Virus record (IMG/VR): IMGVR_UViG_3300007352_000001
Coordinates: 1 to 64,000 of that record
Direction: 5' to 3' (one strand)
Length of the DNA stretch: 64,000 bases
Each line of letters opens with the position of its first letter. Position 1 is the stretch's first letter. Below, piece after piece: positions 7,804 to 63,435 of this stretch. The notes under the pieces are model-generated. The model had not been told where the DNA came from and did no database searches. It saw only the letters and a list, made by a program, of their open reading frames with translations. The translations under genes and the position numbers were made by a program.

Positions 7804-8613
7804 ATGATACCGCGCGGACGCGCCGGCTACGAGTCGACCCCACGCCCCACGCCAGAAGGCAAAGCGGTGCGGCGCTTCGGCGCTCGGATGGCGAAGACCG
7901 ACCGGTGGGCAAACAAGCCCAGCAACAAGGTCGCCTATCAGTACGGCGACGGGATGGCGAAGCACTTCGAGCGGCCGGCACCCTACTTCCAGCATCAGCC
8001 GACCGGCCTCTACGTCCAGCAGCATTCCACGGTGATGGGCACCGACACGCGCCTGACCGGTGACGTGCAGTACTCGGTGCCGGGCATGGGACGCCTCGCG
8101 GTGATCAAACACGACGAGCTGCGTCCCGCCCCGCATGGCATGGACGTGCTGGCGGCGGCTCGGCACAACCGCACGATGACGCGTGGCGCGAAGTGGCCGG
8201 GGCCGGTTGGCCGGCTGGACTATCTCACGCGCAAGCACGAAGGGATCAACGTGCGCTGGGACGACATCCTCGCCGAGGCGTTGAAGAAGTCCTCACCGCT
8301 GCTCGGCAAGACCACCAACATGTTCGGGCCGACCTCGCAGAGCCCCGATGTCCACCAGCGCCTGCGCGCGGTCCTCAGCAACCCGACGCACGACACCTGG
8401 GACAACGCCCACGGCATCGTCGTCTCGCAACATGGAGGCCTCGGCGGCACGACCCTCTGGCAAGCGGTGCTGGCGGTCGACCCGAGCTTCCCGAACGTCG
8501 GTCCCCGGTCCGATGCGTCTGGTCGACGGTTGAAGGGGTGGGATCGAATCCCGGATCAAATGACGTTGGCGCGAGCGATCAAGCACGCCACGTCGCTCAA
8601 GCCGCGGCGCTAG
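7804..8613 (+). CDS. two-domain hypothetical protein
   Basis: AAGGAG RBS; N-terminal IPRGRAGYES; internal WDDILAEA linker. Confidence 0.65.
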   Translation: MIPRGRAGYESTPRPTPEGKAVRRFGARMAKTDRWANKPSNKVAYQYGDGMAKHFERPAPYFQHQPTGLYVQQHSTVMGTDTRLTGDVQYSVPGMGRLAVIKHDELRPAPHGMDVLAAARHNRTMTRGAKWPGPVGRLDYLTRKHEGINVRWDDILAEALKKSSPLLGKTTNMFGPTSQSPDVHQRLRAVLSNPTHDTWDNAHGIVVSQHGGLGGTTLWQAVLAVDPSFPNVGPRSDASGRRLKGWDRIPDQMTLARAIKHATSLKPRR

Positions 8614-8757
8614 TCGCGGCGGGTCTCACTGCGGTCTCTGCGGCGAAAACGTCACCGCACGATCACCGGCAGTTCACGGGTGCGGTGCTACCGACGGGAG
8701 AGGTACGCGCATGCAGCCGGGAGAAAGGGGGTTGGTCGCGAGTCTGCGGAGTGAGCG

Positions 8758-18345: not shown

Positions 18346-19180
18346 CGAGTACGACGACGTCGGCTTCGTGGCGCACCACACGCGGTTCCGGCACACCCCG
18401 AGTCTCGACCAGCACCGCACCCTTTTCCAATCGCTCCTCCGGCTCCCTGGCGTCGTGCCGTACCGGCAGAAGATGCAAGTCGGCCGCGATGAACAACACG
18501 GCTTGGGCGCCCTCGTGCAAGACCAGGCACGCCGCCGTGAGATCCTCGCGGAGATCCGGGCGATCGCAACTGACCACAAGGTCGGCATCGACCTCGTGCA
18601 GCGGCGCACCAGCGAGTACGTCGATCGCGTCTTGAAGGGCGAACTGCCCGGTCAGTACTCCGACGATCTCGCCGTGCAGAAGGCATGCGTCGGCTGCTCA
18701 GACATCGGCTACTTGGACGACGACGGGCTCTGCGCGAAGTGCATCGCGCGCGTGACCTACCACGTCGTCGACCACGAGACAGCCACCGACCGCTTCCACG
18801 TGGTGAATCAACTCTACGGCGTGCGTGTGTTCGCCTCGAACAACAAGGGCGAGGCCGACAGCGCGGCGCGTGACTGGACCGCCGGCCGGCGCGCGAAGGC
18901 CCGCCAGGGCATCTTCATGAACGCGGGCGAGGCGATCGACGCCGTCGCCCACGGGCAGCCGGTCCGCGGCGCCGCGAAGACGCTCACCAAGAAGACCTTC
19001 GTCCGCAATGACGTCGTCGAGTTCACTGATGGTGCGGGGATCCTGCAACGCGGAGTGGTCCTCCGTGCCCACCGTACGGTGCATGGGCTTGGGTATGTTG
19101 TCCAGGTCACCCGGACGCAGCACAATGTCTGGGTGGTGGCCGCGGATCTCCGCAAAGCGAACCCCGAGCACTGGCAATGA
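18338..19180 (+). CDS. multi-module hypothetical protein (zinc ribbon, internal helical tag, C-terminal SH3-like barrel)
   Basis: CVGC...CAKC; MNAGEAIDAVAHGQPV at 18917. Confidence 0.65.
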   Translation: MSDEYDDVGFVAHHTRFRHTPSLDQHRTLFQSLLRLPGVVPYRQKMQVGRDEQHGLGALVQDQARRREILAEIRAIATDHKVGIDLVQRRTSEYVDRVLKGELPGQYSDDLAVQKACVGCSDIGYLDDDGLCAKCIARVTYHVVDHETATDRFHVVNQLYGVRVFASNNKGEADSAARDWTAGRRAKARQGIFMNAGEAIDAVAHGQPVRGAAKTLTKKTFVRNDVVEFTDGAGILQRGVVLRAHRTVHGLGYVVQVTRTQHNVWVVAADLRKANPEHWQ

Positions 19181-19184
19181 TCCG

Positions 19185-19421
19185 GTGACCACGGAGCTGA
19201 AACGGAGCCGGTGCACGGTGCCTACCACCATCCACACCACCGCAGGCCAGTGCCACTTCGTCATGATCCCTGGCGGGTTCGTCGCCATCGTCCCTGGCCG
19301 GGTGGGTTGGTACTCGGTGCACTCTCGACAGTGCCCGGAGCCCACCGTGGATGAGCCGAACCGAGCCAGCCGATTCGCCCACGTCGACCGCGTTAGTCGC
19401 CGACTCGCCCGCAAGCGCTGA
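19185..19421 (+). CDS. small hypothetical protein with GRVGWYS motif
   Basis: GTG just after the upstream stop; motif at 19296. Confidence 0.4.
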   Translation: MTTELKRSRCTVPTTIHTTAGQCHFVMIPGGFVAIVPGRVGWYSVHSRQCPEPTVDEPNRASRFAHVDRVSRRLARKR

Positions 19422-19533
19422 CGCCACGTTGTACTGTCCTGCGTGCGGGCATCGCGGAGAGGCCCGTCGATGCAAACTCGTGTGCGCCAACCCCGCGTGC
19501 AGCGTGCAGATCATCCTGACGTGCGCGGACTGA
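19351..19533 (+). CDS. small zinc-ribbon protein
   Basis: CPACG...CKLVC....C......C. Confidence 0.5.
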   Translation: MSRTEPADSPTSTALVADSPASADATLYCPACGHRGEARRCKLVCANPACSVQIILTCAD

Positions 19534-27299: not shown

Positions 27300-29036
27300 A
27301 TGATGCGGAAGTTGGTTCTGATCGTCGCAACGCTCCTGATTGCGAACACAGTCAGCGCGGAAAACTGGACGCAGTTCCGGCGCGATGAGCGCCACTCTGG
27401 CTGGGCCACGCTGACGCTCGATACGCCGCTGCATCTCGTCTACGACGGCACGCTGCGCTGGTACAAAAGCGGATGGGTGCCGTCCCCGGCCGTGCAGGTC
27501 GACAACCTGACGATCCGCAACGACACGGTGATGCTGATGGGCTCGGTCGCGGGCGGTGACCCCAAGCAAGCGCACGGCGCCGCGCGGTGGGCCGCGTACC
27601 TCTCGCGCTCGAAGAACTTCGCCAACGCCAAGCCAGGCGGACAGGCTGCCTACCGGCCGTCGCTCTATTTCCTGGAGAGCATCACCCCGAAAGCGGGCAT
27701 CGAGACGGACTCGGGGCACCACCCGTGCCAGTTCTCCATGGGCCTCACCGATGCCGGCGGCTGGATGATGGAGTCGGGCTTCCTGAAGTTCAGCGGCAAC
27801 GTCGTCAGCACGCGCATGCAGTCGGACATCTTCGGCCCGTCGATCTGTCGCGATGACGACTCCGAGGGCCTCTTCATCTCGCGCCAGCAGTGGCATGGCG
27901 GCGGCATGTACGCCCGCCGGCAACCTATGCGGAGCCAGGCCACGGGCACGGGGACGCTCTGGGCGCAGTGGGGCGCGGTCCCTGACGGCGACAACAGCGG
28001 CGACGTCCTCGGCTACACCATCGCCTACGATGCGGTGTACGCCGGCCAGTACCTCGTCAGCAACTTCGTCACCTCGGTCGGCAACCCGAAGAACCTGCCC
28101 AAGAACTACGAGTTCGCCCCAGAGGTCTCCGGCCTTTGCAGCTGGCAGCTGAATCCGCAGCAGCGCCTCTCGTGCCGGCCGGGCTCGTGGGGGCAACTGG
28201 CGACCGACGGGATCCGCCTGTGGACCTACGAGCAGACGCCGTACGAGCGCATCCCCGACGGCTACTGGCAGGTTGGCGGGGCCTCGCGAAAGCTCGTCGC
28301 GCTCAGCATCCCTGACCTGGTCACGATCTTCGAGGCGGATGTCGGCAACATCCCGCTGAACGTGCAGGACGCGCCGCTGGTCGGCCCGTCAGTGATCGCT
28401 ACGATCGCCTACCACAACGATCAGCCGTTCATCGAAGCGTACGACCAGGTGACGTTCACGAAGCTCTGGTCGCGCACCGTGCCGATAGTGCCGCGCTCGG
28501 GCGGCTGCGCCTACTGGCCGGCCCGTGGCACAGAGCAGGTCGTGCTTGCTGCCTCCGGCGACACCATCGTCGTCGCCTCCAACGGCATCAGCGTGCTCGA
28601 CGCCACCACGGGCGAGCTGCTCTTCCAGGACAAGCTCGGCACCACCTACTTCAATCCAGTCATCGCCGACGGGCAACTGTTCGTGCTCCGCGATGATTCT
28701 GGACCGGGGCAAGATCCGGTGACCAACAACTGCTCGGGCAATGCGCTGGAGGTGTGGGCGGGGGTCAACGTTCCGACCATCCCACTCACCCCGCCACCGA
28801 CCGCCAAGCCGACGCTCACCGGAACAGCCACGCGGATCCCGACGCGGACCGCCACGGAGACGCGCACGGCCACGCGTACACGGACGCCGAGGCCTACACG
28901 GACACCGACCACGACGCGCACGGGTACGCGCACCGCTTCACCGACGCGCACACCAAGCGCAGCGCCAGCGTCTCCCACGCCGACCGAGTGCACGTGTCCG
29001 TGTCCGTGCCCGCCGACGGCAATCGGAGCGCAGTGA
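27300..29036 (+). CDS. secreted PQQ-like beta-propeller protein with Pro/Thr-rich tail
   Basis: Signal peptide; NWTQFRRDERHSG; VLDATTGELLF; PVIADGQLFV; PT/RT repeats. Confidence 0.75.
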   Translation: MMRKLVLIVATLLIANTVSAENWTQFRRDERHSGWATLTLDTPLHLVYDGTLRWYKSGWVPSPAVQVDNLTIRNDTVMLMGSVAGGDPKQAHGAARWAAYLSRSKNFANAKPGGQAAYRPSLYFLESITPKAGIETDSGHHPCQFSMGLTDAGGWMMESGFLKFSGNVVSTRMQSDIFGPSICRDDDSEGLFISRQQWHGGGMYARRQPMRSQATGTGTLWAQWGAVPDGDNSGDVLGYTIAYDAVYAGQYLVSNFVTSVGNPKNLPKNYEFAPEVSGLCSWQLNPQQRLSCRPGSWGQLATDGIRLWTYEQTPYERIPDGYWQVGGASRKLVALSIPDLVTIFEADVGNIPLNVQDAPLVGPSVIATIAYHNDQPFIEAYDQVTFTKLWSRTVPIVPRSGGCAYWPARGTEQVVLAASGDTIVVASNGISVLDATTGELLFQDKLGTTYFNPVIADGQLFVLRDDSGPGQDPVTNNCSGNALEVWAGVNVPTIPLTPPPTAKPTLTGTATRIPTRTATETRTATRTRTPRPTRTPTTTRTGTRTASPTRTPSAAPASPTPTECTCPCPCPPTAIGAQ

Positions 29037-33564: not shown

Positions 33565-34377
33565 ATGCCTGGTCCGGATTTCGCCGTCGACGGCTTGTCT
33601 CCCACTCAAGTGCCGGGGCTGGGTCTCCAGCCCCGGTCACTCGGGAGCTGCAACAAGTGCCGCTACTACGGCGAGCCGGCGTTCGACGATCGCTGCCCTC
33701 AGTGCGGAGATCCTATGGAACTGAAGACGCCTGCAAATCCTGCTGCCGACACGCGTACCAACGCGCCAGGCAGTCAGCCGCAGGCGCCCGCGGCGCTCAC
33801 CTCGTCCGCCGACCAATCGACCATGGAATCCATGGTCGAGGGGGCTGACGGACTGGAGTGCGCCTTCTGCGGGTTGGTCATGGGCCTCGAAGAGGAGTGC
33901 TGCCCGCGGTGCGGGCTCACGGTGGAAAACACCGAGAGTTCTTTCGCAGCCAGTGCCTCCTCGCCGAAGTCCTACCAGCCTGGCGGGCTCCTGCCTTCCG
34001 AAGATCATCCCATGAACTGCGCAGCCTGCGGCATGCCCGTGGGTGAGTCGCTCTGCAACAACTGCGGCTTCCGTGCAGTCAGCGAAGACGAGGACCTCTC
34101 GTGGTCCGACATCGTCTCGCCGGCTGTCCACGCGAACTCCCGCTTCGCGGTCTCGGCCGCGATGCAGTGCGACGAGCAGGGACTGAAGCAGCTGGCCAAC
34201 TCGCTCGTCTGGGGCGAGGACGGTCAGCGGCAGCTCGACCCGGAACAGCTGGCCGGCGAGCCGCCCAAGTGGCTCCCAGCACAGCACGAGTCGCTCTGGC
34301 GCGATCTCGTCACGGACCACTCGTACACCACGTACCGTGACGCGGTCTTCGCGCTCAAGCGCGAACTCCTGGCCTGA
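33565..34377 (+). CDS. multi-zinc-ribbon protein
   Basis: Three CxxC...CxxCG ribbons. Confidence 0.65.
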   Translation: MPGPDFAVDGLSPTQVPGLGLQPRSLGSCNKCRYYGEPAFDDRCPQCGDPMELKTPANPAADTRTNAPGSQPQAPAALTSSADQSTMESMVEGADGLECAFCGLVMGLEEECCPRCGLTVENTESSFAASASSPKSYQPGGLLPSEDHPMNCAACGMPVGESLCNNCGFRAVSEDEDLSWSDIVSPAVHANSRFAVSAAMQCDEQGLKQLANSLVWGEDGQRQLDPEQLAGEPPKWLPAQHESLWRDLVTDHSYTTYRDAVFALKRELLA

Positions 34378-34683: not shown

Positions 34684-36294
34684 ATGTCGGATCCCGTTAC
34701 CTCCCCGCTCCTGCTGGAGGAGACGCGCATCTTCACGCCCCAGATCGTGGAGCGCGCAACGCCCGGTGGTCGTCTGCGACTGCAAGGCATCTACCAGCTC
34801 GGCGAGGTCGTCAACCAGAACAAGCGTCGGTACCCGAACCCGCTCTGGGATCGGTTGCTGGGGGAAGGTTCCGCGTTTCAGAACCGCGTCCGCGCTCGCC
34901 GTGTACTCGGCGAACTCGGGCACCCCAAGGACGGCAAGACGCTCCTCGAACGCGTCTCGCACCTGATCACCAAGACCTGGATCGACCCCAACGGGCGGCG
35001 TGACTGTCTCGCCTGCGAGCAGAGCCTCAACCCCGGCCACTACCACGTCATGGCCGAGGAAGAGGTGCTCAACACGCCGCACGGGAAGATCCTGGGCGAA
35101 CTCTACGAAGCTCAGGTCGAAACCGGCGTTTCCTCGCGTGGCCGCGGCACGCTCGTCCCGATGGGCGAGTACTCCAACGTCAACGACGACTACGCCATGG
35201 AGACCTTTGACCACGTGCTCGATCCGAGCACGCCTGGTGCGATGCCGCGCGTCGTGTCCGAGAACGTCGTCGGCGTCATCTCCCGCTTCGCCAACTGCGA
35301 CGCCACCCCTGCGGAACTGCAGGGGTACCGTTCCATCCTGGCTGAGGTGACCGAATCGGCCGCGCCCGAGATCCGTTCCAACGCCCACGCGGTGATGGAA
35401 GCGATCGAGGTGCGTCTTGCCAACGCGAGTCGTGGACAGGTGCAGTGCTCGGTGCCGGCGTCGGCACCCCTGCTGCACATGTCCGACAGTGATTCTCGCG
35501 TCGAGTCCCCTCTCGCCGCAACCCCAACCCTGGAGGCACGCATGACCATCACCAAGGACCTGCCCGAGGTCCGTGCGATTGTCGCCGAGGCCGTCCGCGA
35601 GCACGAGGCATCGCTCCGCACGCAGTTTGACACCGCCATGTCCGAGATGGTCGCGACGGTGGAGAGCCTGCAGCAGGAGCTGCTCGCGTCGCAGCAGCGC
35701 AATGAGGCTGCTGACCTCGTCGGCAATGAGCTGGTCTCCCAGCTCAAGGAAACGAATCTGAAGCTCACGGCGTACTCGACCGCGAACAGCGGTGGGCATG
35801 ACGTGCTGCAGAAGTTCGACACCGCCAAGGGCGTGATCGAGGAACTCATCGAGCACGTCCGCAGCCTGCGCTACGCCGAGGCCCGCGCCGATGCGGCCGA
35901 GCGTCTCCTCTCCGAGGTGGTCGCTCGCACGCAGCGCGAGCATCTGATGGCGCACGTCGACCGCCTGCTCCAGGTGGTCCCCGAAGAGCACGTCGGCCGC
36001 GTGAAGCCGTTCCTCACCGAGGCGAGCAGCATCGCCGAGGCGAACCGTCGCTTCTCCACCGTCACCGCCGCGCTCATCACCGAGGCGCCGGAGACCGAAC
36101 AGCCGGCCGCGGTGCGTACCGACGGCGCACTCCCGCCGACCGCGGGACACCACGCCGCCGCCCTCACCGAGTCGACCACGCTCGTCGGCACTCCTACCCA
36201 GGGGACGCAGGCCGGGCAGCAGGTCAACGAGAGCGTGAACATCACCCGCGCGATGGTGCGCCGGCTGTCCGGCCGCACCGCCGTCGGCGCGTAA
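34684..36294 (+). CDS. gp21: T4 gp21-type prohead protease fused to a scaffold-like coiled coil
   Basis: NQNKRRYP, GELGHP, LNTPHGKI, GVSSRGRG, FDHVLDPST; coiled-coil C-terminal half; directly upstream of the capsid gene. Confidence 0.9.
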   Translation: MSDPVTSPLLLEETRIFTPQIVERATPGGRLRLQGIYQLGEVVNQNKRRYPNPLWDRLLGEGSAFQNRVRARRVLGELGHPKDGKTLLERVSHLITKTWIDPNGRRDCLACEQSLNPGHYHVMAEEEVLNTPHGKILGELYEAQVETGVSSRGRGTLVPMGEYSNVNDDYAMETFDHVLDPSTPGAMPRVVSENVVGVISRFANCDATPAELQGYRSILAEVTESAAPEIRSNAHAVMEAIEVRLANASRGQVQCSVPASAPLLHMSDSDSRVESPLAATPTLEARMTITKDLPEVRAIVAEAVREHEASLRTQFDTAMSEMVATVESLQQELLASQQRNEAADLVGNELVSQLKETNLKLTAYSTANSGGHDVLQKFDTAKGVIEELIEHVRSLRYAEARADAAERLLSEVVARTQREHLMAHVDRLLQVVPEEHVGRVKPFLTEASSIAEANRRFSTVTAALITEAPETEQPAAVRTDGALPPTAGHHAAALTESTTLVGTPTQGTQAGQQVNESVNITRAMVRRLSGRTAVGA

Positions 36295-36333: not shown

Positions 36334-37860
36334 ATGATCACTGCCAATCTGGTGGAACAGACGAGTGGTCGTGGCCTGAGCGACAACTTCCTGTCGCTGG
36401 GTCGCGTCCTCTCCGAGGAGCGCTGGGCCGACTACTGCAACGACCCCGAGATCCCCATCGCAGAAGACGCGACCCGCTACGGTCTCGCGTGCATGCTGGA
36501 GAATCTCGATCGCTTCCTCGGTCAACTCGACGAGACCACGCGCGCGGTCGCGATCGGCGACTTCCAGAAGTACGCCTTCCCCCTCGTCCGCGCCATCTTC
36601 CCTGAACTCGTCGCGAACAGCCTGGTGTCGGTGCAGCCGATGCTCGGCCCCACGAGCCTGATCTTCTACCTGGACTTCGTCTACGGGACGAACAAGGGCT
36701 CGGTGCGTCGCGGTGACACCGCCTTCTCGGCGGTGGCGCGCGGCCCGAACAACCCATCGTACACCTCGCCGAACGTCGACGAGGAGCAGGTCGCGACTGG
36801 CGACGGCACCACGGTGGCGTTCACCGCGAACATCTCCTTCACCCCGATCGTTCCGTCCTCGATCGTCATCACCGACGGCATCCAGGTCGTGACCGACAAC
36901 GGGGCGGGCGGTGTGACCGGCGACGCGTCGGCCGGCTCGGTCAACTACGCCAACGGGTCGCTGGCCGTCACCTTCAGCTCGGCGCCGTCGTCGGGCACCC
37001 CGATCACCGTGTCGTACACGTACGACATGGAAGCCAACCCCCTCCTGCCGGAGATGGACCTGGTGCTGCAGAGCACCCCGGTCATGGCCCGGCCGCGCAA
37101 GCTCAAGACCAAGTGGTCGCTGGAGGCGGCGTTCAACCTCCGCTCGCTGCATGGTCTGGAGGCTGAGGTCGAGTTGACTTCGGCCGTCGGCAGCGAGATC
37201 CGCTTCGAGATCGACCGCGAGGTCATTCTCGATCTGCAGAAGCTCGCGGGCGCGGGCTCGGTGTTCTGGAACAAGGACCTGCCGCAGGGCGTGTCCTTCA
37301 CCGAGCAGAAGCTGTCGATCATCGACACCTTCGTCACCGCCTCGAACCTCATCCACAAGACGACTGGTCGCGGCACCGCCACCTGGATCCTCGGTGGCGA
37401 GGGCGTGGCCAACGTCATCGAGACTCTGCCCGGCTTCGTGCCGACGCCGGGTCTCCCGAGCGGTCTCGTCAAGGGCGTGTACCGCGCGGGCCGTCTGAAC
37501 GGGCGCTGGGACTTCTTCAAGGACCCGTTCTACACGGACAACTTCTTCATGATGGGCTACAAGGGCATGAGCTTCCTGGAAGCCGGCTACGTGTACGCCC
37601 CGTACATCCCGCTCTACACCACGCCGACGATCGTCCTGGACGACTTCATCGCGCGCAAGGGTCTCGCCACGCAGTACGGCAAGAAGGCGGTGAACCCGCT
37701 CTTCTACGTCACCGGTGAGGTCGACCGCGGTCTCGCTCTGGAGACCAAGGCTGGTGTCGCCGCGGGCACCATCTCGTCGAGCGGTCAGGCCGTCCTGACC
37801 CACGGTTCGGCGAAGGAAGACCTCGGCCTGGCAACGGGCCGCGGCGTCTTCGGCATCTGA
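36334..37860 (+). CDS. gp23: T4 gp23-type major capsid protein
   Basis: LVSVQPMLGPTSLIF, RKLKTKWSLEAA, EIRFEIDREVI, AGYVYAPYIPL, KGLATQYG. Confidence 0.96.
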   Translation: MITANLVEQTSGRGLSDNFLSLGRVLSEERWADYCNDPEIPIAEDATRYGLACMLENLDRFLGQLDETTRAVAIGDFQKYAFPLVRAIFPELVANSLVSVQPMLGPTSLIFYLDFVYGTNKGSVRRGDTAFSAVARGPNNPSYTSPNVDEEQVATGDGTTVAFTANISFTPIVPSSIVITDGIQVVTDNGAGGVTGDASAGSVNYANGSLAVTFSSAPSSGTPITVSYTYDMEANPLLPEMDLVLQSTPVMARPRKLKTKWSLEAAFNLRSLHGLEAEVELTSAVGSEIRFEIDREVILDLQKLAGAGSVFWNKDLPQGVSFTEQKLSIIDTFVTASNLIHKTTGRGTATWILGGEGVANVIETLPGFVPTPGLPSGLVKGVYRAGRLNGRWDFFKDPFYTDNFFMMGYKGMSFLEAGYVYAPYIPLYTTPTIVLDDFIARKGLATQYGKKAVNPLFYVTGEVDRGLALETKAGVAAGTISSSGQAVLTHGSAKEDLGLATGRGVFGI

Positions 37861-37862
37861 TC

Positions 37863-37885
37863 GAAGCGGGAGGTGGGCTCGCTTC
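37863..37885 (+). terminator. hairpin after the capsid gene (possible terminator or stability element)
   Basis: GAAGCGGG...CTCGCTTC stem; no U-tract. Confidence 0.35.
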
Positions 37886-37925
37886 GGTGAGTCCACCTCC
37901 GTCCTTCCCCACCACGGAGGATTAC

Positions 37926-38264
37926 ATGGATCCAAGCAACAGCGGCGAGTGGATCAAGCTCTTCTCCACGCTCGACATGGGCGTGATGGTCGCCATCGGC
38001 ATCATCGCTCTGATCTGCGAGCGCGCCTCGAAGGTCAACGACGCCATGGCCCTCCTGATCCCGCTCGCTCTCGGCACCGCCTGGGGCATGCTCGAAGCGT
38101 CGCAGCAAGGCTGGGGAGAACCGTACGTGATCGCCAAGGGGGCGCTCATGAACGGCGCCGGTGCCTCAGTCGCCGCGCAGCTCGTCAGCCAGGGCTGGGA
38201 CAAGTTCATCGAGAAGGTCTCAGGCAGCAAGACGACTCCTCCACCGCCACCGCCTGGCGCGTAA
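37926..38264 (+). CDS. holin-like small membrane protein
   Basis: GGAGG RBS; about 3 hydrophobic segments and a charged/Pro tail. Confidence 0.5.
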   Translation: MDPSNSGEWIKLFSTLDMGVMVAIGIIALICERASKVNDAMALLIPLALGTAWGMLEASQQGWGEPYVIAKGALMNGAGASVAAQLVSQGWDKFIEKVSGSKTTPPPPPPGA

Positions 38265-38277
38265 CACCGGACGACCC

Positions 38278-38796
38278 ATGTCGTTCATCAACTGGCTATT
38301 CCAGTCCGACTGGATGCCGCACCGCTACTGTGTGCTCGGCAACCCGTGGCTGGTGTGGCCGCAGGTGATCGCGGACGCCATCATCGCCTTGTCGTTCATC
38401 ACGATGCCCTTCGCGATTGCCCAGTTCGTCAACAAGAACCATGAGAAGCTCGTGGCAGCGGGCATCGGGTTCGTCCGGCTCTTCGCGCTGCTGGAACTGT
38501 TCATGTTCTGTTGCGGCGTCCGGCACCTCGTGCAGGTCTACACCATGTTCGTCGGCGCCTACGTGCTCGATGAGATGGTCACCCTCGTCACCGCCTGCTT
38601 CGCACTCCCCACAGCGGTCGCCGTGTTCTGGGGCGTCTCACGGGCCAACTTCATGTGGGCGGACTCGCTCGTCATCGAGCGGTTGGAACGGGCCATGACC
38701 CGATTGGCGGGGATCATCGTGCGCATTCGTCCGAAGAGCACCATCATTCCACAACCCGACACCATCATCACCCATGAGACGGCCCCCTCCCCATGA
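38278..38796 (+). CDS. stand-alone ethylene-receptor-like membrane sensor domain
   Basis: WMPHRYC..PWLVW..IADAIIALSF..MP; FMFCCGVRHL; 3 TM segments; no kinase domain. Confidence 0.75.
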   Translation: MSFINWLFQSDWMPHRYCVLGNPWLVWPQVIADAIIALSFITMPFAIAQFVNKNHEKLVAAGIGFVRLFALLELFMFCCGVRHLVQVYTMFVGAYVLDEMVTLVTACFALPTAVAVFWGVSRANFMWADSLVIERLERAMTRLAGIIVRIRPKSTIIPQPDTIITHETAPSP

Positions 38797-39269
38797 CCGA
38801 GCAGTCGTCGACCGACCTGGAGTTGGTCGAGGACTTCGCCATCGTCGCCCAGGACTTGCGCGAGGCTGTGACGCAGCTGCGCCGGCTGAACGCCTCTCCT
38901 CCCCCACCGGCCGAGGAGAAGACCTGGAAGCAAGTGATGGTGAACGTCCTCGGCACCATCATCGCGTCGCTGCTCTCCGCAGCGTTCGGCGCCTACCTCG
39001 GGCTCGCCGTGAAGATGGGACAGATCGACCGTATCCTTGAAGATCTCGCCAAGACCGACACGCGTCACGCCGAGGAAGCGGAGCAGTTCGAGCAGCGCGC
39101 TTCGCGCGACCAAGAAGACACCCAACGCATCATCGACGACCTGCGCTCCAAGCAACAGGACCTTGTCGCTGAGGTGGTGGGATTGAAGTCCACTGACCGG
39201 CTGCACGAGCGGGAACTCGACTCGTATGAGCGCCGGCTCGCCACCGTGGAGTCCCGGCCGCACAAATGA
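38793..39269 (+). CDS. single-TM coiled-coil protein (lysis-accessory-like)
   Basis: One TM segment then a long coiled coil; ATGA coupling. Confidence 0.55.
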   Translation: MTEQSSTDLELVEDFAIVAQDLREAVTQLRRLNASPPPPAEEKTWKQVMVNVLGTIIASLLSAAFGAYLGLAVKMGQIDRILEDLAKTDTRHAEEAEQFEQRASRDQEDTQRIIDDLRSKQQDLVAEVVGLKSTDRLHERELDSYERRLATVESRPHK

Positions 39270-40003
39270 CCGACGTTCAGCCGCTCCTCCAACCGAAGAA
39301 GCTCGTCGAGGACGACCTCAAGACCTACGTCTTGCACATGCTCGGTGCGCCGTTCGTCACCGTCGAGGTCAAGCCCGAGCAGATCACCACGTTCATCACG
39401 AGCGGCCTGGAGCGGTACTCGCGCCTGATGCCCAAGCTCCGCTACTTCTCGATCCCAGCGTTTGCCGGCATCCAGGAGTACGAGCTGCCGCGCGACACCA
39501 TCGGCTTCGGTGTGTGCGACGTGATGATCCCGCGCCTCGATCCGATCGCGCCATTGCTGCTGAGCAGCGGCCCGCGCCTCGACATTTTCGGCTACCGGTA
39601 CTCCTACCCCTACCGCGACATCTCCGAGCTGTACATCGACTACTTCTACTTCAAGGAAGCCACGCGCATCCTCTCGGCCGACTTCGACTGGGAGTACCTC
39701 GATGGCGCAATCCGCATCCATCCGAAGCCTGACGAGCCGTTCCCGCTGACCTACGTGAGCGCGTTCCCGCGCGACCTCGACTCGTTTCCCGCGGACGACT
39801 TCGACTGGTTGAAGGACTACGTGCTCGGCAGCGTGAAGGTGGCCGTCGGTCATGCGCGCCGGAAGTTCGGCACGATTCCTGGTGCGCAGACCGGGCAACA
39901 GCTCGACGGCGCGCAGATGATCAGCGAAGGCATGCAGATGGTGAAGGACGCGGAAGAAGACCTGCTGCTCCGTACGCCGCCCTTCCCGCTGTGGCGTACC
40001 TGA
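39266..40003 (+). CDS. gp13: neck/head-completion protein (T4 gp13-like)
   Basis: LKTYVLHMLGAPFVTVEV..EQI; WLKDY...K..G..RRKF..IPG...LDG. Confidence 0.85.
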   Translation: MTDVQPLLQPKKLVEDDLKTYVLHMLGAPFVTVEVKPEQITTFITSGLERYSRLMPKLRYFSIPAFAGIQEYELPRDTIGFGVCDVMIPRLDPIAPLLLSSGPRLDIFGYRYSYPYRDISELYIDYFYFKEATRILSADFDWEYLDGAIRIHPKPDEPFPLTYVSAFPRDLDSFPADDFDWLKDYVLGSVKVAVGHARRKFGTIPGAQTGQQLDGAQMISEGMQMVKDAEEDLLLRTPPFPLWRT

Positions 40004-56662: not shown

Positions 56663-57162
56663 TGCGCCCCTCCGATCTCACCAAACAGGTCCACCGTGCG
56701 CTCAAGGAAGAGTGGGACCGGTTGAAGGAGCAAGAAGGGAAGAAGCTCGCGCGCGAGTTCAAGAATGACCTGCGCACGCGCATCAAGCTCCAGGCCTTCA
56801 CCAGCTGGGTGCCTCTCTCACCCGAATACAAGAAGCGCAAGGAGAAGCTCGGGCTCGACCCGCGCACGCTGATGGCACGGGGCGACTACGTCAACTCGAT
56901 CCGGATCCGCCGCACAACCGAGAACACCTACGTCGTCGACGTGCCGCAGACCGTCAAGCACTACTCCGGTCTCACCTACAAGGAGCTGGCGGCGGTGCAC
57001 GAGTACGGCAGCAAGAAGGCGCACATCCCGGCTCGGCCGCATTGGCGTCCCACCATCCGTCGCTACCAGGCTCGCAAGCGCGAGCTGGAGAAGGCGATGC
57101 AGGAGAAGCTCGTGCAGCGGGTCGAGAAGCGCGTGAAGGCCTCGCTCAGCGGTGGGAGCTAG
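56662..57162 (+). CDS. tail completion/neck protein (HK97 gp10 / virion morphogenesis-like)
   Basis: WVPLSP.Y..RK, AAVHEYG...HIPARPHWRP. Confidence 0.75.
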   Translation: MRPSDLTKQVHRALKEEWDRLKEQEGKKLAREFKNDLRTRIKLQAFTSWVPLSPEYKKRKEKLGLDPRTLMARGDYVNSIRIRRTTENTYVVDVPQTVKHYSGLTYKELAAVHEYGSKKAHIPARPHWRPTIRRYQARKRELEKAMQEKLVQRVEKRVKASLSGGS

Positions 57163-57737
57163 AGCGCGACCAGGAGCCCGGTAGAGACGATCAGGATCAA
57201 CACGAAGAGCATCACCCAACGGGTTGCAATGATCCGAATGCTGATGTCCTGGCCGAAAAACTCCGTGCTCTTCTTGCGACGACGCTGCCCGTCGACCGGC
57301 TCTAAGACGATGCTCTTGATCAGGCACATGCGCCGGAAGAAGTAGACCCACATCGGCACGAAGGTCGCCAAGAACAGGACGCCAATCACGACGTGCAAGA
57401 TGTCCTCGCCCGCCACCTTCCAGACGATCAGGGCGAGCGTGACCTTGCCGGTTGTCGAGGCTAAGAACTGGTCCGCGGCCACGCCCAACTCTTTCGCCAC
57501 CGTGGTGAAAGCGAGAGCGATGTCCTTGCCGAGCTGTGCCCAGTCGCTCACGCGTTCAGGGGTCAGTGCGCCGAGCGCGTTGGGGTCTACAGTCGGGGTG
57601 GAACGCATCCGCTCAGCCTGCTGGGCCAGGTCCAGCTTCTGCATCTCTGACAGCCCGCTCGTGTCAACGGTGACAGCAGCGAATGCTCCACTGCTGAACA
57701 CCAGGGCTCCTACGACGATCGCCACCGTCATCCTCAT
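57159..57737 (-). CDS. membrane protein with signal peptide
   Basis: Signal peptide plus 2-3 TM segments; ATGA coupling to pyrE. Confidence 0.7.
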   Translation of the reverse strand: MRMTVAIVVGALVFSSGAFAAVTVDTSGLSEMQKLDLAQQAERMRSTPTVDPNALGALTPERVSDWAQLGKDIALAFTTVAKELGVAADQFLASTTGKVTLALIVWKVAGEDILHVVIGVLFLATFVPMWVYFFRRMCLIKSIVLEPVDGQRRRKKSTEFFGQDISIRIIATRWVMLFVLILIVSTGLLVAL

Positions 57738-61741: not shown

Positions 61742-63313
61742 TCACTCGGTCAAATACGCACGGAAGCGTATGCGATCGCCGTACACCACTTCGAGTTCGT
61801 GCCCGTCGGGCCAGCGCTCTTCTGCGCGCGGTGCCCACGGCAGATACCGACCGAGGAAGAAGAACGCCGCTGGCGGGGTGACATCGCCCCAGGCGCCATC
61901 CTCGGCCGCACGAAACTCGCGCGATCGGTCCCGTGCATCCAAATCCCCAGCAAGGAAGCGGAGCGTCTCGTAGTGCACGCTCCAGCGGTCGGAGAAGAAG
62001 TTGACCTGCGTGCCCGCCGGCAAGGTGACCACCTGCTCGGCGAAGAGCCGCAGTTCGGGTGCAAAGACGTGCTCGGCCTCTTCGGTCTTGAGCGACGCCG
62101 GGTAACGCAAGATGTCCACCGCGGCACTGAGAGCGAGAATCGCCCCGAGCGCGGCCGTCCACTGGTAGCGCTTGGAGTGCCACAAGGCGCCGAGCGGCAG
62201 CGCCGCCAGGAACGCGATGAACGGCGCGAGCGCCAGCGTGCGTCGGAAGTCGCCGTTGCCAGTGGTCAGGATCGCTCCCCACGGGAAGATCAAGACAGCT
62301 GCGCAGCAGACGGCGCACGCCCAGTCGAACCGGCGATGCCAAGCCAGCACGAAGCCGACAGCGGCGGCGATCGAGATCAGTGGGTTGATCGGTGGGAAGC
62401 CTGGACTGGACAGGCCGTCACCGAAGTCTGGGCGCCCGCCAGCGAGAAGCCCAACAACGAACTTCCCTAGCTCGGCGATGATGAGCGCCACGCGCTCCCA
62501 CCAGTGCGCCGCGGCCAGCCACTCCTCGGACGTGAAGATCATCAGGCCGGAAGCGCGGTTGAAGTACTGCTGTGGGTTCTCGACCGCATACAAGATCATC
62601 GGCACCACCGCGGTGCTCACCGCCACCGCGAAAATGGTCGCCCGCGCCAGGTAGCGATCAGACGGCTCACGGATTTTCGCCAGCACGAACATAGCCGCGT
62701 AGAGCGCAAAGGTGAGTGGATAGGCGTTGTACGTGTAGATCCCCAAGCCTGCGAGGAACCCCGCGGCCAGGGACAGCCCTGGGTGCGCACGGGTACGCAG
62801 CGCGTAGGTGAGCACGATGCAGGTCGCCAGCATCACCAGCGGCCAACTCGCCACCATGTAGCCGGTGCGGCTCAGGTGGAAGTGCCACGGCATGCACGCC
62901 AGCAGGAAGGCGGCGATGGTCGCCTGTGGGCGTGAGAACCAGAGCAACCCGAGCACGTAGGTGAGCACCACCGTGGCGATACCGAGGACCGCGATCGCCC
63001 CACGCAGCGTCGTCATCGAGACACCGAAGACAGAGAAGACGGCGGCGACCCAGTAGAGCGGCCCGGCCGGTTGCCCCAGTCCGCTGGGGTAGACGTAGGG
63101 ACCGATCCAGCCTTCGTCGAGGATGCGCTGGGCATCGAGCCCGGTGAGCGCCTCATCGCCGTGGAGACCGAACGGCACGTCGCCGATCCCCACCAAGCGG
63201 ACCAGTGCGGCGAAGACCGCCACCACCAGCCCCAGGCTGATGGTCAGCGCCCGCTCCCGCGTCGCCGTCGCCACCCCTGCCTGCGCCGGGGCGGCGGCAA
63301 CCCGAAACATCAT
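61742..63313 (-). CDS. GT-C fold membrane glycosyltransferase (GT39/ArnT-like)
   Basis: LVRL..G.VP.GLHGDEA, many TM segments, PWHFHLSR, GIYTY. Confidence 0.85.
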   Translation of the reverse strand: MMFRVAAAPAQAGVATATRERALTISLGLVVAVFAALVRLVGIGDVPFGLHGDEALTGLDAQRILDEGWIGPYVYPSGLGQPAGPLYWVAAVFSVFGVSMTTLRGAIAVLGIATVVLTYVLGLLWFSRPQATIAAFLLACMPWHFHLSRTGYMVASWPLVMLATCIVLTYALRTRAHPGLSLAAGFLAGLGIYTYNAYPLTFALYAAMFVLAKIREPSDRYLARATIFAVAVSTAVVPMILYAVENPQQYFNRASGLMIFTSEEWLAAAHWWERVALIIAELGKFVVGLLAGGRPDFGDGLSSPGFPPINPLISIAAAVGFVLAWHRRFDWACAVCCAAVLIFPWGAILTTGNGDFRRTLALAPFIAFLAALPLGALWHSKRYQWTAALGAILALSAAVDILRYPASLKTEEAEHVFAPELRLFAEQVVTLPAGTQVNFFSDRWSVHYETLRFLAGDLDARDRSREFRAAEDGAWGDVTPPAAFFFLGRYLPWAPRAEERWPDGHELEVVYGDRIRFRAYLTE

Positions 63314-63435
63314 GGTCGGCGCGTAGCATACCTCTTCAGCTTTTGTCCAGCACCACCTCACCACCCCACCACACTGACGGCACCGGTCGTCATTAACCGC
63401 GGCCTTTTTGTGAGCCGCGAAGCGAGGTCACCCGC

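What the first reader, a model, noticed from the sequence alone, without database searches (positions are those of the whole stretch)
38278..38796. Stand-alone ethylene-receptor-like sensor domain between holin-like genes after the capsid gene
Seen: MPHRYC..PWLVW..IADAIIALSF..P and FMFCCGVRHL with three TM helices, and no GAF or kinase domain. Known: the ETR1 ethylene-binding domain uses Asp25, Cys65 and His69 for Cu(I), and bacterial homologs begin MPHGxC. The equivalent Asp (38374), Cys (38512) and His (38524) are kept; the Tyr32 position is Phe. It is flanked by a 3-TM holin-like gene and a coupled TM-coiled-coil gene. Inference: a copper or small-gas sensor that could tune lysis timing or poison host receptor kinases by heterodimerising.
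Basis: partly seen in the sequence, partly recalled or inferred. Interest (0 to 1): 0.75.

Follow-up and report, generated by a model that had tools for sequence, protein, structure and literature searches.

The report
Phage-encoded stand-alone ethylene-receptor membrane domain
A 241-kb soil phage carries a small membrane protein that is a real, output-less copy of the copper-binding sensor domain of plant and bacterial ethylene receptors; similar genes in other uncultured phages usually sit beside cell-lysis genes, which suggests (but does not prove) a new kind of lysis regulator.

Summary
ORF 38278-38796 (+) encodes 172 aa that match Pfam ETR1_N (E 2e-16, 60.5 bits against a cut-off of 27). 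An AF2 model (pLDDT 90.6) has plant ethylene receptors as its 26 best Swiss-Prot fold matches. The ETR1 Asp25/Cys65/His69 equivalents (D33, C79, H83) are present, there is no output domain, and the gene lies between a gp23-type capsid gene and a neck gene in a complete 241,426-bp phage.

- The protein is unusually derived. Besides Tyr32->Phe it has Ile35->Met, Ile62->Met, Thr68->Arg and Lys91->Thr.
- Stand-alone copies occur in about ten other uncultured phage lineages (20-50% identity, Cys/His invariant). None is found in 50,697 GenBank phage records.
- Eight of the ten lineages have a single-pass coiled-coil membrane gene immediately downstream.
- Four have a profile-confirmed holin or endolysin within 4 kb, and a fifth has a weak spanin-like match.

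Best reading: a copper-site membrane module that works with the phage lysis genes as a holin or antiholin-type regulator. The ligand and the mechanism are untested. The decoy-of-host-kinase idea is poorly supported. I rate it a new variant of a known domain, of moderately high interest.

The parts
38278..38796 (+). Stand-alone ethylene-binding-domain (ETR1_N) protein, 172 aa (P0003)
   Evidence: Pfam PF25487 E 2e-16, 60.5 bits. AF2 pLDDT 90.6. The top 26 Swiss-Prot fold hits are all plant ethylene receptors, probability 1.0, TM by query 0.55-0.65. GC3 0.88; dN/dS 0.16 in the core.
38314..38331 (+). N-terminal periplasmic motif MPHRYC (residues 13-18). Bacterial consensus is MPHGxC
   Evidence: In 143 cellular domains P14 is 97%, H15 99% and C18 100% conserved. 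Position 16 is Gly in 93% but Arg here.
38344..38436 (+). Helix 1 (residues 23-53). Carries D33 (38374-38376, ETR1 Asp25), F40 (Tyr32), M43 (Ile35) and P44 (Pro36)
   Evidence: AF2 secondary structure. Column statistics.
38464..38550 (+). Helix 2 (residues 63-91). Carries M76 (Ile62), C79 (38512-38514, Cys65), R82 (38521-38523, Thr68 position) and H83 (38524-38526, His69)
   Evidence: C79 and H83 are invariant in 150 aligned domains. T82 is 95% Thr elsewhere and Arg here.
38560..38727 (+). Helix 3 plus cytoplasmic helix (residues 95-150). T102 (38581-38583) replaces the 95%-conserved Lys (ETR1 Lys91)
   Evidence: The role of Lys91 in signal output is taken from PMC10266040.
37926..38264 (+). 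Upstream 112-aa small membrane protein (P0001); holin-like candidate
   Evidence: GGAGG ribosome-binding site, GC3 0.85. Hydrophobic segments at 12-30 and 40-58, plus a weaker third. The nearest ESM-Atlas clusters carry Phage_holin_5_1/5_2 (score 0.90, 198 of 256 features; a lead only). 92% identical in relative L002; dN/dS 0.08. No significant Pfam or PHROG holin hit.
38793..39269 (+). Downstream 158-aa bitopic coiled-coil membrane protein (P0002). Translationally coupled at both ends: ATGA overlaps at 38793-38796 and 39266-39269
   Evidence: One TM segment around residues 48-72 and a C-terminal coiled coil. Weak Rz-like spanin hit, phrog_2466 E 8e-4. 87% identical in L002; dN/dS 0.22. A protein of the same architecture lies downstream of the domain gene in 8 of 10 phage lineages.
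36334..37860 (+). Context: gp23-type major capsid protein
   Evidence: Pfam Gp23 4.8e-59; phrog_138 5e-55.
34684..36294 (+). Context: prohead protease (Peptidase_S77) with a long C-terminal extension
   Evidence: phrog_207 1.8e-33; PF03420 9.2e-13.
39266..40003 (+). Context: head-tail adaptor-like gene
   Evidence: phrog_211 1.2e-7.

Best explanation
SHOWN.
- The ORF encodes a real, selectively maintained, output-less member of the ethylene-binding-domain family (Pfam ETR1_N).
- It has three membrane helices, predicted N-terminus out and C-terminus in, and a cytoplasmic helix after the third.
- The Asp/Cys/His residues that hold Cu(I) in ETR1 are kept.
- It sits in the late structural operon of a complete 241-kb T4-capsid-type soil phage. 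It is preceded by a small membrane protein and translationally coupled to a single-pass coiled-coil membrane protein.
- Comparable stand-alone copies exist in about ten unrelated uncultured phage lineages. They nearly always have the same downstream partner type and are often beside holin or endolysin genes.

INFERRED (most likely mechanism).
- The protein is made late, inserts into the host inner membrane and probably dimerises like other members of the family.
- It probably binds Cu(I). Together with the coiled-coil partner it acts on the phage's membrane-lesion step, as a holin or antiholin-type regulator of when the membrane is breached. It does not feed a phosphorelay.
- The state of the copper site (metal loading, redox, or a small pi-ligand such as ethylene) would be the input.
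- In this particular phage the output residue Lys91 is lost and an Arg appears next to the His ligand. Three of the seven ethylene-binding residues are also changed. Copper binding is therefore more likely than high-affinity ethylene binding.
For: Identity:
- Pfam ETR1_N E 2e-16; 3754 homologues.
- AF2 pLDDT 90.6; plant ethylene receptors are the only confident fold matches.
- D33, C79 and H83 are kept.

Functional gene:
- GC3 0.88.
- dN/dS is 0.16 in the core against 0.93 in the tail.

A phage family:
- Twelve phage copies were found, eleven of them stand-alone. Cys and His are invariant and Asp is kept in 11 of 12.
- On a tree of 155 domains the phage label needs 3 changes, against 11.7 for shuffled labels (0 of 500 shuffles as low).

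Micro-synteny: the window, L002, L003, L004, L005, L006/7, L008, L010 and L011 all have a bitopic, mostly coiled-coil, membrane gene overlapping or within 12 nt downstream.

Link to lysis genes:
- L003: a Phage_holin_10 gene is immediately upstream.
- L005: the cassette runs M15_4 endolysin, 174-aa membrane protein, the domain, tail-anchored coiled coil, and is followed by an integrase.
- L010: the order is tail fibre, 87-aa TM protein, the domain, 89-aa protein, then a GH108 endolysin (phrog_315, 5e-29).
- L011: an Amidase_2 endolysin lies 3.7 kb downstream on the same strand.
- L006: an Rz-like spanin hit (E 1.5e-4) lies two genes upstream.

In this phage:
- The only endolysin found (GH24, genome 238026-238412) has no holin or spanin beside it, so its membrane partners must be encoded elsewhere.
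- P0001 resembles Phage_holin_5 clusters.
- P0002 weakly matches Rz-like spanins.

Topology and size match class I holins (three TM helices, N-out/C-in, charged C-terminal tail). That comparison rests on my own knowledge.

Plant ETR1 and ERS1 are reported to conduct Ca2+, so the fold can plausibly affect membrane permeability (bioRxiv 10.1101/2025.10.20.683334).
Against: - No holin, antiholin or spanin profile matches the domain protein itself.
- In this phage the trio lies between capsid and neck genes, about 41 kb from the endolysin. That is not a classical cassette.
- Two lineages (L009, L015) show no lysis neighbours.
- The holin-like call for P0001 rests on language-model similarity at a score that 4-10% of shuffled proteins also reach.
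- The spanin hits are weak. In L005 and L011 the coiled coils are probably cytoplasmic, unlike spanins.
- Structure prediction of a 2:2 complex with P0002 gave no answer (score 0.11).
- Clustering of phage copies on the tree may owe something to long-branch attraction.
- No binding or lysis experiment exists.
Confidence: 0.45

Rival explanations
1. Decoy or dominant-negative. The truncated domain heterodimerises with the host's own ethylene-binding-domain sensor kinases and silences or locks their signalling during infection.
For: Thousands of bacterial sensor proteins, many from soil taxa, start with this domain, so a host target is plausible. The best cellular hits include a Pyrinomonadaceae (Acidobacteriota) kinase. 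The family acts as dimers (PMC10266040). From my own knowledge, truncated plant receptors can act dominantly.
Against: - Best identity to any cellular domain is about 41%.
- The protein is changed at 11 positions that are at least 90% conserved in cellular copies. A mimic should resemble its target.
- Phage copies cluster together and keep their own partner gene in phages of 38-66% GC.
- The host is unknown, so no target has been identified.
Confidence: 0.12
2. Split sensor. The domain senses ethylene, copper or redox state and passes the signal through the coupled coiled-coil membrane protein to a phage or host regulator. It would control gene expression or a lysis-lysogeny type decision, not the lysis machinery itself.
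For: The downstream partner is conserved and translationally coupled. All stand-alone copies keep a 25-60-aa cytoplasmic helix after helix 3, like the linker of full-length kinases. A response-regulator gene lies two genes downstream in L006. Some phages carry a complete domain-PAS-HisKA-HATPase kinase (L012-14).
Against: - No kinase or receiver gene is next to the trio.
- The P0002 match to HisKA_3 is not significant (E 0.01, below cut-off).
- Lys91, the residue proposed to couple binding to output, is lost here and is variable in the stand-alone phage copies (T, R, K, E, S, D).
- The gene sits in a late structural operon, which is too late for most regulatory decisions.
Confidence: 0.15
3. 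The domain is itself the pore: a viroporin or pinholin-like cation leak that depolarises the membrane and so triggers lysis. The copper site would be structural or gating.
For: Plant ETR1 and ERS1 and algal homologues are reported to be Ca2+-permeable, with the Cys65 equivalent needed for ethylene modulation. The protein has class I holin-like size and topology (own knowledge). In L005, L010 and L011 it sits where holins usually sit.
Against: The channel report is a preprint on full-length eukaryotic receptors. L003 has a recognisable holin immediately beside the domain gene, so the domain is not the only candidate hole-former there. No holin family match.
Confidence: 0.13
4. No link to lysis. 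The protein is a copper-handling or morphogenesis accessory, for example buffering Cu(I) during infection, or anchoring head or neck assembly at the membrane as T4-type proheads assemble there. It would sit where it does because it belongs to the head-neck operon.
For: It lies between the capsid and adaptor genes, and P0002 overlaps the adaptor gene's start. The copper ligands are kept. L009 and L015 have no lysis neighbours.
Against: In the other lineages the gene is not in head modules but after tail-fibre genes and near lysis genes. One Cu(I) per monomer is a poor buffer.
Confidence: 0.1

Closest known systems
Ethylene-binding domain of plant ETR1/ERS1 and bacterial SynEtr1 / AzoEtr1 (Pfam PF25487 ETR1_N)
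   Same: Three-helix membrane domain. Profile match is well above cut-off and the fold match is confident. The Asp25, Pro36, Cys65 and His69 equivalents are identical. The bacterial-type N-terminal PH..C motif is present.
   Different: - No GAF, PAS, kinase or other output domain.
- It is encoded by a virus.
- Tyr32->Phe, Ile35->Met, Ile62->Met, Thr68->Arg and Lys91->Thr, plus six more changes at positions at least 90% conserved.
- Ethylene and copper binding are untested.
Class I holins (for example lambda S105) and multi-TM antiholins encoded between lysis genes (for example P2 LysA) - own knowledge
   Same: A small late protein with three TM helices, N-out/C-in, and a charged cytoplasmic tail. 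In several phages it is encoded among holin, endolysin and bitopic coiled-coil genes.
   Different: No sequence or profile similarity to any holin or antiholin family. It carries a conserved metal-ligand triad that no known holin has. Hole formation and timing effects are untested.
Complete ethylene-receptor-like histidine kinases in viruses: brown-alga phaeovirus or megavirus kinases noted in the literature (PMC6324907; PMC6944256 ref. 63), and the phage contigs L012-L014 found here
   Same: A virus-borne copy of the same sensor domain.
   Different: Those are full kinases (domain-PAS-HisKA-HATPase, 479 aa in L012). The window's protein is the sensor domain alone.
Rz-type i-spanins and XhlA-type lysis accessory proteins (for the partner P0002)
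   Same: Single TM segment plus coiled coil. Weak PHROG hits to Rz-like spanin (E 8e-4) and 'hemolysin' families.
   Different: The TM segment is internal (residues ~48-72), not N-terminal. No o-spanin lipoprotein gene is embedded or adjacent. In L005 and L011 the coiled coil is probably cytoplasmic.

Membership tests
Ethylene-binding domain (Pfam PF25487 ETR1_N) | Profile match above the curated cut-off | tested here: met
   60.5 bits against a cut-off of 27, E 2e-16, profile positions 2-93 of 97. Same result on the DNA.
Ethylene-binding domain (Pfam PF25487 ETR1_N) | Three N-terminal transmembrane helices with the family fold | tested here: met
   AF2 helices 23-53, 63-91 and 95-150, pLDDT 90.6. 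The top 26 Foldseek Swiss-Prot hits are all ethylene receptors, probability 1.0.
Ethylene-binding domain (Pfam PF25487 ETR1_N) | Cu(I) ligands Cys65 and His69 on helix 2, and Asp25 on helix 1 | tested here: met
   C79, H83 and D33. Cys and His are invariant in 150 aligned domains and Asp is 97% conserved. Roles are taken from PMC10266040.
Ethylene-binding domain (Pfam PF25487 ETR1_N) | All seven residues required for ethylene binding in ETR1 (Asp25, Tyr32, Ile35, Pro36, Ile62, Cys65, His69) | tested here: inconclusive
   Four are identical (D, P, C, H). Three are conservative changes (Y->F, I->M, I->M) at positions 98-99% conserved in cellular copies. The effect of these particular substitutions is unknown.
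Ethylene-binding domain (Pfam PF25487 ETR1_N) | Conserved Lys91 on helix 3, which pairs with Asp25 for signal output | tested here: not met
   Thr102 here and in P0004. Lys is found in 95% of cellular copies. An Arg replaces the Thr68 position next to the His ligand, which may be a relocation of the charge (inference).
Ethylene-binding domain (Pfam PF25487 ETR1_N) | Saturable Cu(I)-dependent ethylene binding | not testable with these tools
   Needs copper titration and labelled-ethylene binding on the expressed protein.
Ethylene receptor / sensor histidine kinase | Cytoplasmic output module (GAF or PAS plus HisKA and HATPase, or other) on the same polypeptide | tested here: not met
   The 172-aa protein ends 50 residues after helix 3, and ETR1_N is the only domain found. 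It is a domain homologue, not a receptor kinase.
Holin / antiholin | Small phage membrane protein with at least one TM segment and a charged C-terminal tail, made late | tested here: met
   Three TM helices and an Arg/Lys-rich tail, in the late structural operon.
Holin / antiholin | Encoded next to the endolysin or other lysis genes | tested here: inconclusive
   Not met in this phage: the GH24 endolysin is at genome 238026-238412, about 41 kb away. Met in relatives L003, L005, L010 and L011.
Holin / antiholin | Match to a described holin or antiholin family | tested here: not met
   No Pfam or PHROG holin hit for P0003 or for three other phage copies.
Holin / antiholin | Forms or delays membrane lesions and changes lysis timing | not testable with these tools
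   Needs expression or knock-out experiments.
i-spanin (for P0002) | N-terminal TM segment, periplasmic coiled coil and a cognate o-spanin lipoprotein gene | tested here: inconclusive
   A TM segment and coiled coil are present, but the TM segment is internal. The profile hit is weak (E 8e-4). No lipobox ORF is embedded or adjacent.

The most novel reading that the evidence does not exclude
Phages have turned the ethylene-receptor copper domain into a stand-alone gas, copper or redox gate on the lysis clock. The Cu(I) site would read a small diffusible ligand (ethylene or another pi-ligand) or the cell's copper or redox state. Through the coupled coiled-coil partner and a holin, it would advance or delay membrane permeabilisation. 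That would be the first virus-encoded small-gas sensor controlling lysis, and a new antiholin or holin class.
Probability: 0.15. Interest if true: 0.9.

Novelty: new variant of a known kind. Interest (0 to 1): 0.66.

Why it matters
- The ethylene-binding domain is known only as the input module of receptor kinases and other multidomain sensors in plants, algae, fungi and bacteria. A natural, output-less viral version with its own conserved partner gene is not described in the literature I could search. It is also absent from 50,697 GenBank phage records.
- If it regulates lysis, it would add a metal or ligand-sensing component to holin biology. That would link phage burst timing in soil to copper, redox state or ethylene.
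- No experimental structure of this domain exists in the PDB, by sequence or by fold. Compact natural versions of 114-172 aa, which fold confidently in silico, are attractive targets for solving the ethylene-binding site. They could also serve as minimal scaffolds for ethylene sensors.

Tried and rejected
- Chance ORF or non-coding: rejected on GC3 0.88, dN/dS 0.16 and the Pfam match.
- Close relatives in isolated phages: none. megablast and tblastn with four different queries found nothing, and P0001 and P0002 also have no match.
- IMG/VR search with the single protein found nothing. The search only worked with an alignment.
- PDB sequence searches (single protein and 150-sequence profile) and Foldseek against the PDB gave no meaningful hit.
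- Complex prediction of 2x P0003 with 2x P0002 scored 0.11, which the tool reports as 'no answer'. It is not used as evidence either way.
- Two apparently stand-alone short homologues (P0169, P0170) turned out to be pieces of frameshift-split cellular kinases in one JGI sample and were excluded. Many other short hits in the representative search sit on 1-3-kb contigs or have junk tails, so they were not counted as stand-alone.
- P0001 and the L003 holin are not detectably homologous.
- The downstream partners share architecture but not alignable sequence.
- The P0002 match to HisKA_3 (E 0.01, below cut-off) is treated as coiled-coil noise.
- An embedded o-spanin in P0002 was looked for in the other frames and not found.
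The only hints point to Acidobacteriota.
- Endolysin families SLT, Amidase_2 and M15_4 were searched in the phage genome. Only GH24 looks like the endolysin; the SLT match lies inside a 746-aa ORF, probably a virion protein.
Full report
**1. What is at the coordinates**

The + strand carries an ORF from ATG 38278 to TGA 38796, encoding 172 aa (P0003).

The three adjacent genes are clearly coding:
- 37926-38264 (P0001, 112 aa) has GC3 0.85.
- 38278-38796 (P0003) has GC3 0.88.
- 38793-39269 (P0002, 158 aa) has GC3 0.84.

The genome as a whole is 66% GC. P0001 has a GGAGG ribosome-binding site. P0003/P0002 and P0002/next gene overlap by ATGA, which implies translational coupling.

**2. Identity of the protein**

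Pfam gives one significant family, PF25487 ETR1_N (ethylene receptor 1-like N-terminal domain). The hit is E 2e-16 and 60.5 bits against a cut-off of 27, covering residues 25-122, with no further domain. PHROGs has no family for it.

An exhaustive phmmer search of 1.84 billion representatives finds 3754 relatives at E<=1e-3. Nearly all are long multidomain sensors with a median length of 485 aa. The best cellular identities are about 35-41%.

With a 150-sequence alignment (A7), AlphaFold2 gives a confident model. Mean pLDDT is 90.6, with helices at 23-53, 63-91 and 95-150. Foldseek against Swiss-Prot models returns plant ERS1, ETR1, ETR2 and EIN4 as ranks 1-26. Probability is 1.00, TM by query is 0.55-0.65, and residues 19-149 align on ERS1 residues 11-137. 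No solved structure of this fold exists in the PDB, by sequence or by fold.

**3. Residue-level comparison**

The functional roles below come from PMC10266040 and from PMC11819568 and PMC6944256:
- Cys65 and His69 coordinate Cu(I).
- Asp25 is needed for copper and ethylene binding.
- Lys91 pairs with Asp25 to transmit the signal.
- Seven residues are required for ethylene binding.

Conservation in the 143 cellular domains of A7:
- Invariant and kept here: C18, F75, C79 and H83.
- Kept here: D33 (97% conserved), P44 (97%), P14 and H15 (97-99%).
- Changed here and in the 84% relative P0004: G16R, W21G, Y40F (Tyr32), I43M (Ile35), F72L, I76M (Ile62), T82R (Thr68), W91F, K102T (Lys91), S109A and P121S. 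All these positions are 90-99% conserved elsewhere.

So the copper triad is intact. Three of the seven ethylene-binding residues carry conservative changes, and the output lysine is gone. An Arg now sits next to the His ligand. Whether it takes over the Asp-pairing role is my inference only.

**4. The genome and the neighbourhood**

The window is the first 64 kb of a 241,426-bp IMG/VR virus record with direct terminal repeats, judged 100% complete. Soil metagenomes hold it.

Genes around the trio:
- Upstream: a T4 gp21-type prohead protease (34684-36294) and a gp23-type major capsid protein (36334-37860).
- Downstream: a head-tail adaptor-like gene (39266-40003).

The capsid protein is under 40% identical to that of any isolated phage, so this is a new lineage with an unknown host.

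The only convincing endolysin is a GH24 lysozyme at genome 238026-238412 (E 5e-45). No membrane-protein gene lies beside it. Lysis genes in this phage are therefore dispersed, as in T4, and the holin must be encoded elsewhere. A crude gene call finds 303 genes, 45 of them with a hydrophobic segment, so the trio is one candidate among several.

P0001 has two clear and one weak hydrophobic segments. Its nearest ESM-Atlas clusters by features and by predicted structure carry Phage_holin_5_1/5_2. The score is 0.90 with 198 of 256 features shared. That is a lead, not proof. P0002 has one TM segment (~48-72) and a long C-terminal coiled coil, with a weak Rz-like spanin hit (phrog_2466, E 8e-4).

**5. 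Relatives in other phages**

A 2.25-kb soil contig (L002) encodes the same capsid-end, then P0001-like, the domain protein and P0002-like, at 92%, 84% and 87% identity. dN/dS against it is as follows:

| Gene | dN/dS |
|---|---|
| P0001 | 0.08 |
| P0003 domain core | 0.16 |
| P0003 C-terminal tail | 0.93 |
| P0002 | 0.22 |

Profile searches restricted to short proteins, and an IMG/VR scan, gave further stand-alone copies at 20-50% identity:

| Copy | Length | Locus / contig | Context |
|---|---|---|---|
| P0085 | 153 aa | L003, 90.9 kb | Phage_holin_10 gene immediately upstream; overlapping 124-aa TM + helical protein downstream |
| P0094 | 167 aa | L004 | Overlapping 127-aa TM + coiled coil downstream |
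| P0166 | 114 aa | L005, 24 kb, temperate | Tail tube ... M15_4 endolysin, 174-aa membrane protein, the domain, overlapping 113-aa tail-anchored coiled coil ... integrase |
| P0167 | 165 aa | L006/L007 | Rz-like spanin hit (E 1.5e-4) and a secreted 105-aa protein upstream; 180-aa TM + coiled coil; then a response regulator |
| P0165 | 185 aa | L008 | TM protein downstream |
| - | 171 aa | L010, 29 kb, 38% GC | Tail fibre, 87-aa protein, the domain, 89-aa protein ... GH108 endolysin (phrog_315, 5e-29) |
| - | 136 aa | L011, 60.7 kb, complete | Tail-fibre-like genes, the domain, 226-aa TM + coiled coil, 150-aa tail-anchored coiled coil ... Amidase_2 3.7 kb downstream |
| - | 139 aa | L009, 350-kb jumbo contig | No lysis neighbours |
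| - | ~127 aa | L015 | No lysis neighbours |

L012-L014 carry a complete domain-PAS-HisKA-HATPase kinase.

Across all twelve phage copies Cys and His are invariant. Asp is kept in eleven, with one Asn; Asn is a known natural variant. The Lys91 position varies: T, T, R, R, K, R, R, K, E, S, D in the stand-alone copies.

On a maximum-likelihood tree of 155 domain cores, the phage label needs 3 changes against 11.7 for shuffled labels, and 0 of 500 shuffles do as well. Long branches make a single origin unproven.

None of 50,697 GenBank phage records encodes the domain. BFVD holds one distant structural match. Two further 'short' hits were frameshift-split cellular kinases and were discarded.

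**6. Interpretation**

Shown:
- This is a real, constrained, output-less ethylene-binding-domain homologue in a phage.
- Such genes recur in unrelated phages.
- They have a conserved partner type downstream.
- They often sit among lysis genes.

Tally over ten lineages (the close pair window/L002 counted once, likewise L006/L007):
- Eight have the bitopic partner immediately downstream.
- Four have a profile-confirmed holin or endolysin within 4 kb on the same strand, and a fifth has a weak spanin hit.
- Two contigs are too short to judge.

For a random gene in a 25-90-kb phage I would expect roughly a 10-15% chance of such proximity. This estimate is mine and was not computed against a null.

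The protein's size, its three helices, its predicted N-out/C-in topology and its basic tail are those of class I holins. A multi-TM antiholin encoded just before the spanin gene has a precedent in P2 LysA. Both comparisons rest on my own knowledge.

I therefore favour a role in the membrane step of lysis, as a holin or antiholin-type regulator whose conserved copper site provides the input. The coupled coiled-coil protein would be its partner. I put this at about 0.45.

The ligand is open. The canonical phage copies (for example P0085, P0166 and L009) keep all seven ethylene-binding residues and a basic residue at the Lys91 position. They could well bind ethylene. The window's copy is derived, so I expect it to bind copper more surely than ethylene.

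A recent preprint reports that plant and algal receptors of this family conduct Ca2+. That makes a direct permeability role conceivable, and I list it as a rival.

**7. What argues against**

- No holin or antiholin profile matches the protein.
- In this phage the gene is in the head-neck operon, 41 kb from the endolysin.
- Two lineages show no lysis context.
- The holin-like call for P0001 is weak.
- The partner's coiled coil is probably cytoplasmic in L005 and L011, which does not fit spanins.
- The complex prediction was uninformative.
- The decoy hypothesis is weakened by the low identity to cellular domains and by the phage-specific clustering and synteny. It cannot be excluded without knowing the host.

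**8. Verdict**

I rate it a new variant of a known kind: a viral, stand-alone, partner-coupled form of the ethylene-binding domain. Interest is moderately high, for two reasons. It opens a testable link between a copper or gas-sensing module and phage lysis. It also offers minimal natural versions of a domain whose structure is still unsolved.

Noticed in passing
L012:4998-6437 (also L013, L014; IMG/VR contigs of 48-61 kb, 39% GC): Phage contigs encode a complete ethylene-binding-domain-PAS-HisKA-HATPase_c histidine kinase of 479 aa (ETR1_N E 3e-25). This is a full ethylene-receptor-like sensor kinase carried by a phage.
   Followed up: partly
L006:7679-8107: A stand-alone response-regulator receiver gene (142 aa) lies two genes downstream of the stand-alone domain gene in a phage contig. 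It hints that some phage copies may feed a phosphorelay.
   Followed up: no
genome 238026-238412 (outside the window; L017:1426-1917): The GH24 (Phage_lysozyme, E 5e-45) endolysin sits alone near the right end of the genome, with no holin or spanin gene beside it. Lysis genes are dispersed in this phage.
   Followed up: partly
window 38521-38523 and 38581-38583: Thr68->Arg (R82) and Lys91->Thr (T102) occur together in the window's protein and in its 84% relative. This may be a relocation of the basic residue that pairs with Asp25. I had no access to the model coordinates to check it.
   Followed up: no
window 36334-39269 compared with L002: Against the same relative, the capsid C-terminus is identical in protein with dS 0.13, but the three small genes have dS 0.33-0.48. 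This suggests mosaic history or different mutation and selection regimes within 3 kb.
   Followed up: no
window 34684-36294: The prohead protease domain (S77) occupies only about the first 190 of 536 residues. The long helical remainder may be a fused scaffold.
   Followed up: no
window 33565-34377: A 270-aa protein with several zinc-ribbon matches (DZR_2, DZR, Zn_ribbon_15; all below cut-off) lies just upstream of the head genes.
   Followed up: no
window 27300-29036; L003:6335-8341, 8341-8685, 18523-19455: A shared domain of unknown function (phrog_15511) recurs in large proteins of both the window's phage and the L003 phage, probably in tail-fibre-like proteins.
   Followed up: no
L018:8001-11003 and L019:8001-11000 (JGI sample 3300041964): Cellular domain-bearing sensor kinases appear split into many short ORFs (the domain, PAS pieces, HATPase pieces). 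The likely cause is frameshift errors in the assembly. Such pieces mimic stand-alone domains in protein databases.
   Followed up: yes
window 57159-57737 (-) and 61742-63364 (-): Other multi-TM proteins of the phage (192 aa with about 4 TM segments; 540 aa with about 9) are encoded within the window. The first is an alternative holin-like candidate that I did not examine.
   Followed up: no
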